From the NCBI RefSeq assembly GCF_001194135.2, contig NC_068985.1:99018316-99067465 (forward strand): a stretch of 49,150 nucleotides of DNA. Reading direction: 5' to 3'. Source of the stretch: Octopus bimaculoides. Taxonomy: Eukaryota. The translations under genes and the position numbers were made by a program. The stretch's first letter is position 1; each line of letters begins with the position of its first letter. Shown piece after piece: positions 44,012 to 44,205 of the stretch. Under the pieces are notes generated by a model. It was not told the DNA's origin and made no database searches. It saw only the letters and a list, made by a program, of their open reading frames with translations.

Positions 44012-44205
44012 GAGCTAACGAAGATGTTTCTCAATGTGGTCTCTTAGACTGTTAGAAACGGCAGCTAAATTTTCTTCTTCAAATTGTACCTCAATGTCTT
44101 AAACCAGAGAAGGACATGCTTCACAATGTAGTCCAAGGGACACACCAAGGCCAGGGTGTTTCTTGATCACGGGTTTGGTTGAAACTAAATAACAATAACA
44201 ACAAC
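44012..44205 (+). mobile_element. Family R, most complete sense-strand copy
   Basis: gagct-aac-gaaga...tcaatgt-ggt-ctcttaga-ctgtta-gaaa-cggcag-ctaaat-ttcttc, then the body and an aactaaataacaataacaacaac tail. Confidence 0.65.

What the first reader, a model, noticed from the sequence alone, without database searches (positions are those of the whole stretch)
44012..44205. Abundant ~200-bp repeat whose 5' end reconstructs to an HDV/CPEB3-like ribozyme (candidate ribozyme-headed SINE-like family)
Seen: at least 12 copies (heads at 18-80+, 7125-, 16319-, 23821-, 24093-, 26314-, 26444-, 29909-, 30102-, 30618-, 37670+, 38190+, 44012+) share a head and end in (CAA)n, with no tRNA A/B boxes. My by-eye consensus is GAGC(C/U)AAC-GAGGGA-GCC-UYUACGU-GGU-CGCUC-GA-C-CUGCUA-GAAA-UAGCAG-CYAAAU-CUCCCUC. 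This gives a P2 pair (GAGGGAG/CUCCCUC), P3 (GCC or ACC/GGU), a 7-nt L3, a GNRA-capped P4 whose pairing survives via G-U in several copies, and C-Y-A-A in the J4/2 position. Established: this is the element order of HDV-like double-pseudoknot ribozymes. L3 resembles CPEB3 (UUCACGU) and, as recalled, trypanosome L1Tc Pr77 (ACC-UCAACGU-GGU). Such ribozymes process the 5' ends of RTE/R2-type retroelements, and R2 SIDEs are ribozyme-plus-3'UTR parasites. Inference: an RTE-mobilised, Pol III-independent element that cleaves itself out of host transcripts. Weak point: P1 is only about 4 bp (GAGC/GCUC) and P1.1 is imperfect, and all copies here are degenerate.
Basis: partly seen in the sequence, partly recalled or inferred. 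Interest (0 to 1): 0.8.

Follow-up and report, generated by a model that had tools for sequence, protein, structure and literature searches.

The report
Old octopus retroposon with structured head
This is a real, very old family of short LINE-dependent retroposons in an octopus genome; its conserved 73-base head could fold like an HDV-type self-cutting RNA, but the helix that would set the cut site is too short, so the ribozyme idea remains untested.

Summary
The repeat is real. A covariance model finds 16 heads in the 49-kb window. Copies are 51-77% identical to the consensus. They start at one defined 5' end, carry a shared ~90-nt 3' module and end in (CAA)n. They often sit head-to-tail inside one another's tails. 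New here: the 73-nt head is a discrete module joined to three different bodies. One of these (43466-43190, minus strand) is a decayed reverse-transcriptase C-terminus of an RTE-like LINE. That fits an internally deleted LINE derivative, like R2 SIDEs or NARTc. The window is Octopus. The reconstructed head folds into P2 (7 bp), a 2-3 bp P3 with a 7-nt loop (UCUACGU) and a GAAA-capped P4, with a C opening J4/2. This is the HDV-like order. However, P1 is only GAGC/GCUC followed by a C·C mismatch, whereas 6-7 bp is normal. P1.1 is marginal. No Rfam HDV-like model matches. The copies show no covariation, which is expected of dead copies. I could not obtain young copies or the parent LINE's 5' end. 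Verdict: observation confirmed; retroposon reading supported; ribozyme plausible (about 0.4) but unproven.

The parts
44012..44089 (+). Head (5' module) of the flagged copy: GAGCTAAC GAAGAT GTT TCTCAATGT GGT CTCTT AGA CTGTTA GAAA CGGCAG CTAAAT TTTCTTCTTC
   Evidence: CM hit of 55.2 bits, E 7.8e-12; sequence
44090..44187 (+). Linker plus shared 3' module of the flagged copy (...GGCCAGGGTGTTTCTTGATCACGGGTTTGGTTGAAACTA)
   Evidence: Alignment of the 3' modules of 11 copies
44188..44222 (+). (CAA)n-type tail of the flagged copy
15..272 (+). Full copy (head 15-91, tail about 245-272). The head directly follows a tail-like ACAAGCAGCAAGCA.
   Evidence: CM 46.8 bits
7000..7185 (-). Copy (head 7113-7185)
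   Evidence: CM 48.6 bits
16190..16384 (-). Copy (head 16309-16384)
   Evidence: CM 53.8 bits
23690..24186 (-). Two copies head-to-tail (heads 24085-24186 and 23812-23894). The first head has an internal partial duplication.
   Evidence: CM 24.5 and 51.5 bits
26060..26503 (-). Two copies head-to-tail (heads 26435-26503 and 26298-26370). The first has a deletion in its head and is cut short.
   Evidence: CM 35.0 and 53.0 bits
28330..28608 (-). B-type copy. Homology starts inside the head at about 28573, and the body is 76% identical to that of copy 30465.
29770..30690 (-). Array of four copies head-to-tail (heads 30610-30681, 30393-30465 [B type], 30092-30164, 29900-29972). Each head abuts the previous copy's tail or lies within 12 nt of it.
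   Evidence: Neighbouring heads are only 46-59% identical (58%, 53% and 46% for the adjacent pairs), no more alike than distant ones.
37662..37790 (+). Short copy (head 37662-37734)
   Evidence: CM 56.0 bits
38185..38470 (+). Copy (head 38185-38254) followed by a second, 5'-truncated 3' module
   Evidence: CM 44.0 bits
43395..43466 (-). Head that starts right after another copy's (CAA)n tail and continues into LINE coding sequence
   Evidence: CM 41.1 bits
43190..43394 (-). Decayed LINE reverse-transcriptase C-terminus fused to that head (..KAS*ALRRL..DIRLSTKPEVDNSVAFPSLQYGCKTWTVYHR..). A younger tRNA-type SINE cuts it at about 43190.
   Evidence: phmmer against 1.8 billion representatives gives 19 hits at E<=1e-3. 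65.7% identity to P0008 over 35 aa. Family alignment.

Best explanation
**Shown**
- An ancient family of 190-300-bp non-autonomous non-LTR retroposons in an octopus genome.
- Each copy has three parts: (i) a discrete 73-nt 5' module, (ii) a variable linker and a shared ~90-nt 3' module, and (iii) a (CAA)n tail.
- The same 5' module, ending within about 5 nt of the P2 3' strand, is joined to three different downstream sequences: the A body, the B body, and the C-terminal RT coding region of an RTE-like LINE.
- New copies repeatedly landed in the tails of older ones, building head-to-tail arrays.

**Inferred**
- The head is the 5' end of the parent LINE. The short elements are internal-deletion derivatives moved by that LINE's reverse transcriptase, which primes on the (CAA)n tail.

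**Inferred, about 0.4**
- The head is, or descends from, an HDV-like self-cleaving ribozyme.
- It would cut at its own first nucleotide and free the element from read-through transcripts.
- In an array, the cut by the next unit would also set the upstream unit's 3' end at its tail.
- The fold would be P1 GAGC/GCUC, J1/2 CAAC, P2 GAGGGAG/CUCCCUC, P3 (G)CC/GG(U), L3 UCUACGU, P4 CUGCUA-GAAA-UAGCAG, J4/2 CCAAAU with the first C catalytic.
For: - **Real family with a fixed 5' end.** Sequence upstream of G1 is unrelated between copies. At 43466 and 29972 it is directly the previous copy's tail; at 15 it is tail-like sequence at the window edge; at 30164 the previous tail lies 12 nt upstream.
- **Independent insertions.** Heads next to each other in arrays are no more alike than distant ones (46-59% against about 50-60%).
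- **Discrete head module.** A, B and the LINE-fused copy diverge right after the P2 3' strand. That point is where an HDV-like ribozyme ends.
- **LINE link.**
- **Shared 3' module and tail.**
- **Fold.** The MFE of the consensus gives P2, P3 and P4, at -19.2 kcal/mol, z = -2.64, matched by 2 of 200 shuffles.
- **Chance estimate.** With P2 and P4 held fixed, shuffles gave P3 plus a P1 of at least 4 bp starting at nt 1 about 0.5% of the time. Adding the J4/2 C gave about 0.16%. That script allowed at most 1 unpaired nt between P3' and P1'. The real head needs 2 under the script's 2-bp P3, so the comparable chance figure, not recomputed, must be somewhat higher.
- **Resemblance to L1TcRz.** P3', P1' and J4/2 resemble it, as rebuilt from published primers: UGGU-GCCAGGG and GCUAAG (PMC3185411; PMC4748587). 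L1TcRz also has a single-pair P1.1.
- **One compensatory change.** C-G becomes U-A at the base of P4 in the three non-A copies.
- **Precedent.** HDV-like ribozymes sit at the 5' ends of the R2, R4/Dong, L1Tc and RTE clades and of their non-autonomous derivatives (PMC3774820, PMC4035085, PMC3414825).
Against: - **P1 is too short.** It has 4 contiguous pairs followed by an ancestral C·C. Column counts are C in 5 of 13 at position 5 (the largest class) and C in 9 of 13 at its partner. Published HDV-like ribozymes have 6-7 bp, and single P1 mismatches go with no in-vitro cleavage (PMC4908430, PMC3774820).
- **P1 is not supported in the copies.** P1 cells are only 50% paired, close to the 30-44% of the slid controls.
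- **P3 and P1.1 are weak.** P3 is 2 bp unless the last P2 base is shared. P1.1 is U-A only in the consensus.
- **No Rfam hit.** No HDV-like model matches at gathering score or at E<=10.
- **No covariation among copies** (59.8% paired against 60.8% in shuffles).
- **Some circularity.** Several 5'-strand positions of P1 and P2 are G/A or C/T ties, so the 'perfect' helices partly rest on choosing the pairing base.
- **Conservation pattern.** The best-conserved block is L4-P4-J4/2. P4 is peripheral in HDV-like ribozymes.
- **Unverified placement.** Neither the parent LINE's 5' end nor any young copy could be examined.
Confidence: 0.4

Rival explanations
1. Same retroposon, but the 73-nt head is a non-catalytic structured 5' module. 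It could be an internal promoter (as Pr77 also is in L1Tc), a binding site for the LINE protein needed for 5'-end or second-strand steps, or a stabilising fold. On this reading the HDV-like look is a partial coincidence.
For: - P2 and P4 are solid helices in the consensus, and the module is discrete. Only these features are firmly supported.
- P1, the helix that defines a ribozyme cleavage site, is substandard.
- No Rfam ribozyme hit.
- The strongest conservation lies in L4-P4-J4/2, not L3.
Against: - With P2 and P4 given, the combination of an adjacent P3 with a 7-nt loop, a P1 of at least 4 bp starting exactly at nt 1, and a C at the start of J4/2 is rare in shuffles, about 0.2-0.5%.
- The module ends exactly where a ribozyme would end.
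- No promoter motif was identified.
Confidence: 0.35
2. The head is not a LINE 5' end. It is the 5' part of an independent small-RNA-derived SINE. Copy 43466 would then be a chimera made when the reverse transcriptase switched template from LINE RNA to SINE RNA at the AAAAT microhomology.
For: - Only one head-plus-RT copy exists in the window.
- The junction lies in a short shared A-rich stretch.
- Related LINE copies from other organisms show no head-like module.
Against: - No Rfam family matches the head, and no A/B boxes are visible in the consensus.
- A switch into the middle of a SINE RNA is less simple than an internal deletion.
- The four foreign LINE loci are probably 5'-truncated, so they say little.
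Confidence: 0.12
3. The head is simply LINE coding sequence, namely the 'FKYLGS...EI..RI' stretch just upstream of KASQAL in the RT. The short elements would then be 5'-truncated LINE tails, so the helices mean nothing.
For: In copy 43466 the head reads in frame into the RT (..NQIASKILKAS*ALRRL..), and 'QI..KI' resembles 'EI..RI'.
Against: - A profile of that RT stretch from 77 family members scores the head translations at 0.3 bits (A consensus) and -0.3 bits (43466). The 95th percentile of shuffles is 0.6.
- The nearly invariant FKYLGS is absent.
- All copies share one 5' end, unlike random 5' truncation.
- The A and B bodies show no similarity to the RT stretch.
Confidence: 0.04
4. It is a tandem satellite or a DNA transposon/MITE rather than a retroposon.
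For: Copies occur in head-to-tail runs. One 9-nt inverted repeat flanks the flagged copy.
Against: - Array neighbours belong to different subtypes and are 46-59% identical, like distant copies.
- Unit lengths differ, roughly 185-295 nt by eye.
- The 9-mer lies outside the 5' end and inside the tail, and other copies do not share it.
- The element termini are not inverted repeats, and there are (CAA)n tails.
Confidence: 0.02

Closest known systems
L1Tc/NARTc and SIDER elements of trypanosomatids (Pr77 / L1TcRz HDV-like ribozyme)
   Same: - A module of about 77 nt at the 5' end is shared by a LINE and its short non-autonomous derivatives.
- The order is P1-P2-P3-L3-P1'-P4-J4/2-P2'.
- P3' is GGU, J4/2 is C-Y-A-A, and P1.1 is a single pair.
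- Cleavage is at element nucleotide 1 (PMC3185411, PMC4035085).
   Different: - L1TcRz has a 7-bp GC-rich P1 (CCCUGGC/GCCAGGG). The octopus head has 4 bp plus a mismatch.
- L1TcRz is shown to cleave and to act as a promoter. Here nothing is tested.
- The LINE clade is different, and the octopus element has a (CAA)n tail rather than poly(A).
R2 SIDEs and R2, R4 and Dong ribozymes
   Same: - Non-autonomous elements made of a LINE 5' end (the ribozyme) plus a 3' end by internal deletion (PMC3414825).
- They depend on co-transcription.
- Dong sits in a (TAA)n microsatellite and is cut at its 5' junction (PMC3774820).
   Different: - Those LINEs carry a restriction-like endonuclease and target fixed sites.
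- The RT fragment here groups with an AP-endonuclease-type, RTE-like family (an Exo_endo_phos_2 ORF lies upstream in L001).
- The R2 ribozyme core (P3/L3/P1.1) is close to that of HDV. The octopus L3 is nearer to CPEB3 and L1Tc.
RTE-derived SINEs and RTE 5' HDV-like ribozymes (Ruminski et al. 2011, cited in PMC3774820)
   Same: A short element keeps LINE ends and a simple-repeat tail. The RTE clade is reported to carry 5' HDV-like ribozymes.
   Different: I could not read that paper or obtain an octopus RTE 5' end, so this comparison rests on citation and on my own knowledge.
CPEB3 ribozyme
   Same: A 7-nt L3 with U..ACGU. From memory, CPEB3 has UUCACGU; the octopus head has UCUACGU. P1.1 is weak in both.
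   Different: CPEB3 is a single-copy intronic ribozyme with a 7-bp P1. The Rfam CPEB3 model does not match any copy.

Membership tests
HDV-like self-cleaving ribozyme | Nested double-pseudoknot order: P1, J1/2, P2, P3, L3, P3', P1', (P1.1), P4, J4/2, P2' | tested here: met
   Met on the reconstructed consensus only. P2, P3 and P4 come out of an unconstrained MFE fold. P1 and P1.1 were placed by hand.
HDV-like self-cleaving ribozyme | P1 of 6-7 bp starting at the cleavage site and lying directly 3' of P3' (PMC4908430, PMC3774820) | tested here: not met
   Only GAGC/GCUC (4 bp), then C·C, with 1-2 unpaired nt after P3'. P1 cells are 50% paired against 30-44% for slid controls.
HDV-like self-cleaving ribozyme | P2 of about 7 bp closing the fold | tested here: met
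   GAGGGAG/CUCCCUC in the consensus. Two 5'-strand columns are G/A ties.
HDV-like self-cleaving ribozyme | 3-bp P3 with a 7-8-nt L3 carrying the conserved C and G | tested here: inconclusive
   CC/GG, plus G·U only if the last P2 base is shared. L3 is UCUACGU in the consensus. Its CpG has decayed in most copies.
HDV-like self-cleaving ribozyme | P1.1 of 1-2 bp between L3 and the bases after P1' | tested here: inconclusive
   U-A only in the consensus (AAA after P1'). Two pairs are possible in the 4 copies that read AG there.
HDV-like self-cleaving ribozyme | Catalytic C at the start of J4/2, followed by A-rich bases | tested here: met
   C in 10 of 13 copies, then Y-A-A-A-U.
HDV-like self-cleaving ribozyme | Match to a curated HDV-like covariance model (Rfam) | tested here: not met
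   No hit at gathering score, none in the 150 listed rows of the whole-window E<=10 search (24 lower-scoring rows not shown), and none at E<=10 in 821 nt holding four copies. The models are family-specific and the copies are decayed, so this negative is weak.
HDV-like self-cleaving ribozyme | Compensatory changes that keep the helices | tested here: inconclusive
   None among copies, as expected for dead copies. One C-G to U-A change occurs at the base of P4 between subtypes.
HDV-like self-cleaving ribozyme | Mg2+-dependent self-cleavage leaving a 5'-OH at position 1 | not testable with these tools
   Needs a bench assay.
Non-autonomous non-LTR retroposon (SINE-like / SIDE-like LINE deletion derivative) | Many dispersed copies with one 5' end and a simple-repeat 3' tail | tested here: met
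   16 copies, unrelated flanks, (CAA)n tails.
Non-autonomous non-LTR retroposon (SINE-like / SIDE-like LINE deletion derivative) | Sequence shared with a partner LINE | tested here: inconclusive
   One copy joins the head to an RT C-terminus. The LINE's own 5' and 3' ends could not be obtained.
Non-autonomous non-LTR retroposon (SINE-like / SIDE-like LINE deletion derivative) | Target-site duplications | not tested
   Only looked at by eye for the flagged copy. The copies are too decayed and many sit inside other copies' tails.
tRNA-derived SINE | Pol III A and B boxes or a tRNA-like head | tested here: not met
   No boxes are visible in the consensus, ARAGORN calls nothing, and there is no Rfam tRNA hit on the heads.
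DNA transposon / MITE | Terminal inverted repeats at the element ends | tested here: not met
   Only one 9-nt inverted pair, lying outside the 5' end and inside the tail. Other copies do not share it.

The most novel reading that the evidence does not exclude
An HDV-like ribozyme variant with a shortened P1 (4-5 pairs) heads a large family of LINE-deletion retroposons in octopus. These elements insert into each other's (CAA)n tails. Cleavage at each head then trims read-through transcripts into unit-length RNAs with both ends defined. This would also scatter many self-cleaving sites through octopus introns and non-coding RNAs.
Probability: 0.25. Interest if true: 0.65.

Novelty: new member of a known kind. 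Interest (0 to 1): 0.4.

Why it matters
If the head cleaves, it would be the first HDV-like ribozyme-bearing retroposon family I can find reported in a cephalopod. A full-text search for HDV-like + ribozyme + octopus returned nothing. Its unusually short P1 would also test the accepted limits of the fold. Recent repeat surveys count 893 unclassified SINE families among recently active octopus insertions (PMC13282606), and octopus LINE activity in the brain is debated. A self-processing 5' module would explain how such promoter-less elements are expressed. It could also affect host transcripts that carry them. If the head does not cleave, this is an ordinary ancient LINE-derived repeat.

Tried and rejected
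1. **blastn with the flagged copy.** It finds only itself, so I needed motif, HMM and CM searches.
2. **Rfam.** The only hit at gathering score is a U6. The listed hits at E<=10 are low-complexity miRNA noise.
3. **Metagenome scan.** An exact 22-mer from the head gave 0 hits.
4. **Homologue search with the frame-merged RT fragment.** No candidates.
5. **Coding-sequence reading of the head.** It looked good by eye, but a family profile rejects it.
6. **Nucleotide similarity between the RT stretch and the A/B bodies.** None found.
7. **Related LINE loci from other organisms (L001, L002, L003, L005).**
   - They share no repeats with the window.
   - They have no head-like module and no Rfam HDV-like hit.
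   - An endonuclease ORF was found only in L001, so the copies are probably 5'-truncated.
8. **A look-up for a Nucella protein.** Not on record.
9. **Octopus vulgaris locus L004.** It confirms the genus but holds no clear copy.
10. **Octopus transcriptome supplement (PMC9115989).** Only chance 12-mers matched.
11. **Ruminski et al. 2011.** Not held in the library.
12. **P1 built from upstream flank (UUGAGC/GCUCAA).** Only 3 of about 13 copies have TT upstream, so I dropped the idea.
13. **Tandem-duplication origin of the arrays.** Rejected by the identity matrix.
14. **Endonuclease remnants in the window.** None.

Full report
**What is there**

The flagged stretch 44012-44205 is one decayed but full-length copy of a short interspersed repeat. 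blastn with it finds only itself, yet the family is real. The 17-mer GAATAGCAGCYAAATC-type motif GAAATAGCAGCYAAATC with up to 3 mismatches occurs 10 times, against 0.35 expected. Iterated nhmmer finds 14 heads. A covariance model built from 13 hand-segmented heads finds 16 in the window, with E from 1e-14 to 8e-3. Three of these were not used to build the model.

Twelve of the 16 are on the minus strand, and nine lie between 23.8 and 30.7 kb.

**Which organism**

A SINE-derived ORF from the window has a single relative in the protein collection, a hypothetical protein of Octopus vulgaris. Its 20-kb chromosomal locus shares the window's younger SINE families at 86-93% identity. That 20-kb locus holds no convincing copy of the present family. 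'Abundant' is thus shown only for this window.

**Anatomy**

- **Age.** Copies are 51-77% identical to the majority consensus and about 50-60% identical to each other. The family is very old.
- **5' end.** All copies begin at the same point (GAGYCAAC...). Upstream sequence is unrelated between copies. At 43466 and 29972 it is directly the (CAA)n tail of a preceding copy. At 15 it is tail-like sequence at the window edge. At 30164 the preceding tail lies 12 nt upstream.
- **3' end.** A and B types share a ~90-nt 3' module (...ATGGTCATGGCTGGAACG...TTTGATCATGGCTGACCTGGGGTTAAAC) followed by (AAC)n.
- **Arrays.** Head-to-tail runs exist: 30681>30465>30164>29972, 26503>26370 and 24186>23894. Neighbours belong to different subtypes and are no more alike than distant copies. 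The runs therefore arose by repeated insertion into tails, not by tandem duplication.
- **What it is not.** There are no terminal inverted repeats. ARAGORN calls no tRNA, no A/B boxes are visible in the head consensus, and no Rfam family matches the heads.

**The head is a discrete module tied to a LINE**

Right after the 3' strand of the long-range helix, the copies diverge into three unrelated continuations:
- the A body;
- the B body, where 30465 and 28573 are 76% identical over 160 nt;
- in copy 43466, a decayed LINE reverse-transcriptase C-terminus..KAS*ALRRL..DIRLSTKPEVDNSVAFPSLQYGCKTWTVYHR...

That stretch gives 19 hits at E<=1e-3 against 1.8 billion representative proteins. These include BovB-type RT tails and a family reading [60 protein letters not shown]. 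The window fragment is 65.7% identical to a member of this family over 35 aa. One member lies just downstream of an AP-endonuclease ORF.

I considered that the head might itself be the RT coding stretch just upstream of KASQAL, because by eye it reads in frame. A profile of that stretch from 77 family members scores the head translations at 0.3 and -0.3 bits. The 95th percentile of shuffles is 0.6, and the near-invariant FKYLGS is absent. I reject that reading.

The simplest account is that the head is the LINE's 5' end and the short elements are internal-deletion derivatives. These would be the analogue of R2 SIDEs and NARTc (PMC3414825, PMC4035085). A template-switch chimera cannot be excluded.

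**The ribozyme reading**

*In favour:*
- The reconstructed consensus folds, unconstrained, into a 7-bp P2 (GAGGGAG/CUCCCUC), a 2-bp P3 closing the 7-nt loop UCUACGU, and a 6-bp GAAA-capped P4. The energy is -19.2 kcal/mol, z = -2.64, matched by 2 of 200 shuffles.
- A C opens J4/2 in 10 of 13 copies.
- The element's first four bases, GAGC, can pair with GCUC just after P3'.
- This is the HDV-like order, and the module's 5' and 3' limits coincide with where such a ribozyme would start and end.
- With P2 and P4 fixed, shuffles gave an adjacent P3 plus a P1 of at least 4 bp from nt 1 about 0.5% of the time. Adding the J4/2 C gave about 0.16%. That script allowed only 1 unpaired base after P3'. Under its 2-bp P3 the real head needs 2, so its own P1 scored 0 there and the comparable chance figure, not recomputed, is somewhat higher.
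- Parts of L1TcRz rebuilt from published primers show the same P3' (GGU), a 7-nt P1' and a C-U-A-A J4/2. That ribozyme works with a single-pair P1.1.

*Against:*
- Published HDV-like ribozymes have a 6-7-bp P1 directly 3' of P3'. Single P1 mismatches, including C·C, go with loss of in-vitro cleavage (PMC4908430, PMC3774820). Here the fifth pair is an ancestral C·C.
- P1 cells are only 50% paired, near the 30-44% of slid controls.
- P1.1 is one pair in the consensus.
- P3 has three pairs only if it shares a base with P2.
- No Rfam HDV-like model matches any copy.
- Several 5'-strand columns of P1 and P2 are G/A or C/T ties, so the 'perfect' helices partly depend on choosing the pairing base.

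Covariation among the copies is absent: 59.8% paired, against 60.8% in shuffles. These are neutrally decaying dead copies, so that result does not bear on function. The only between-subtype signal is one C-G to U-A change at the base of P4, shared by the three non-A copies.

**What could not be done**

I could not obtain young copies or the parent LINE's 5' end.
- The metagenome scan was empty.
- The protein searches reached only one octopus locus.
- Four related LINE loci from other organisms carry neither a head-like module nor an Rfam HDV-like hit, and look 5'-truncated.

**Verdict**

- The retroposon and LINE-dependence parts of the interpretation are supported, and strengthened by the head-RT copy.
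- The HDV-like ribozyme is the most specific and coherent mechanism for a promoter-less element that sits in arrays and inside transcripts. It fails the P1 criterion, though, and is untested. I put it at about 0.4, and a non-catalytic 5' module at about 0.35.
- If true, it is a new member of a known kind (ribozyme-headed LINE derivatives), in a phylum where I found no such report.

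Noticed in passing
window 292-393 (+), with 394-480: A diverged U6 snRNA sequence (Rfam U6, 74.9 bits) lies about 20 nt after the tail of the copy at 15-272. A tRNA-like stretch follows it directly (..GACTCAATGGTTCAGTATTCTGCTTATGATCGTCATGCCGTGAGTCCAAGTCAGGGCGAC). It could be a U6 pseudogene, a U6-headed SINE, or a U6/retroposon chimera.
   Followed up: partly
window 2385-2623, 13518-13682, 14587-14751, 15452-15623, 22518-22756, 25603-25722, 32193-32349, 36080-36195, 41283-42213, 47038-47159: A much younger and more numerous SINE family of about 230 bp, with copies 75-86% identical to one another. It is also present at 87-90% identity in the O. vulgaris locus L004. One copy is annotated there as a 'hypothetical predicted protein'.
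   Followed up: partly
window 12530-12909, 14071-14276, 21727-21892, 42652-43193, 47212-47576: A second young SINE family with a tRNA-like head (GGTTCCGGGTTCA B-box-like) and an internal microsatellite. One copy interrupts the LINE RT fragment at about 43190. The stretch 42886-42987 is repeated exactly at 42998-43099 across a 10-N gap, which looks like an assembly artefact.
   Followed up: no
window 3800-4240, 5100-6050, 8170-8370, 9500-10190, 11240-12200, 21470-21700, 33220-33330, 45850-46350 (approximate): 4274 N bases in many gaps, mostly flanked by (TA)n, (AC)n or (ATAC)n microsatellites. The assembly is fragmentary here, so some repeat copies may be missing or collapsed.
   Followed up: no
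window 36790-36957, 37139-37410, 17260-17480, 17948-18387: Long trinucleotide arrays, (ACT)54, (ATA)n/(TAA)n/(ATG)n, (AAT)26/(GAA)n and (AAG)~147. They may be expanded tails of other simple-repeat-tailed retroposons.
   Followed up: no
L001 8091-10972 (ENA ERZ21867824 contig): In an assembly filed as a metagenome, this eukaryote-like contig carries the related LINE (endonuclease plus RT). Its ORFs were called with TGA read as tryptophan, so the stored 'proteins' read through stop codons.
   Followed up: no
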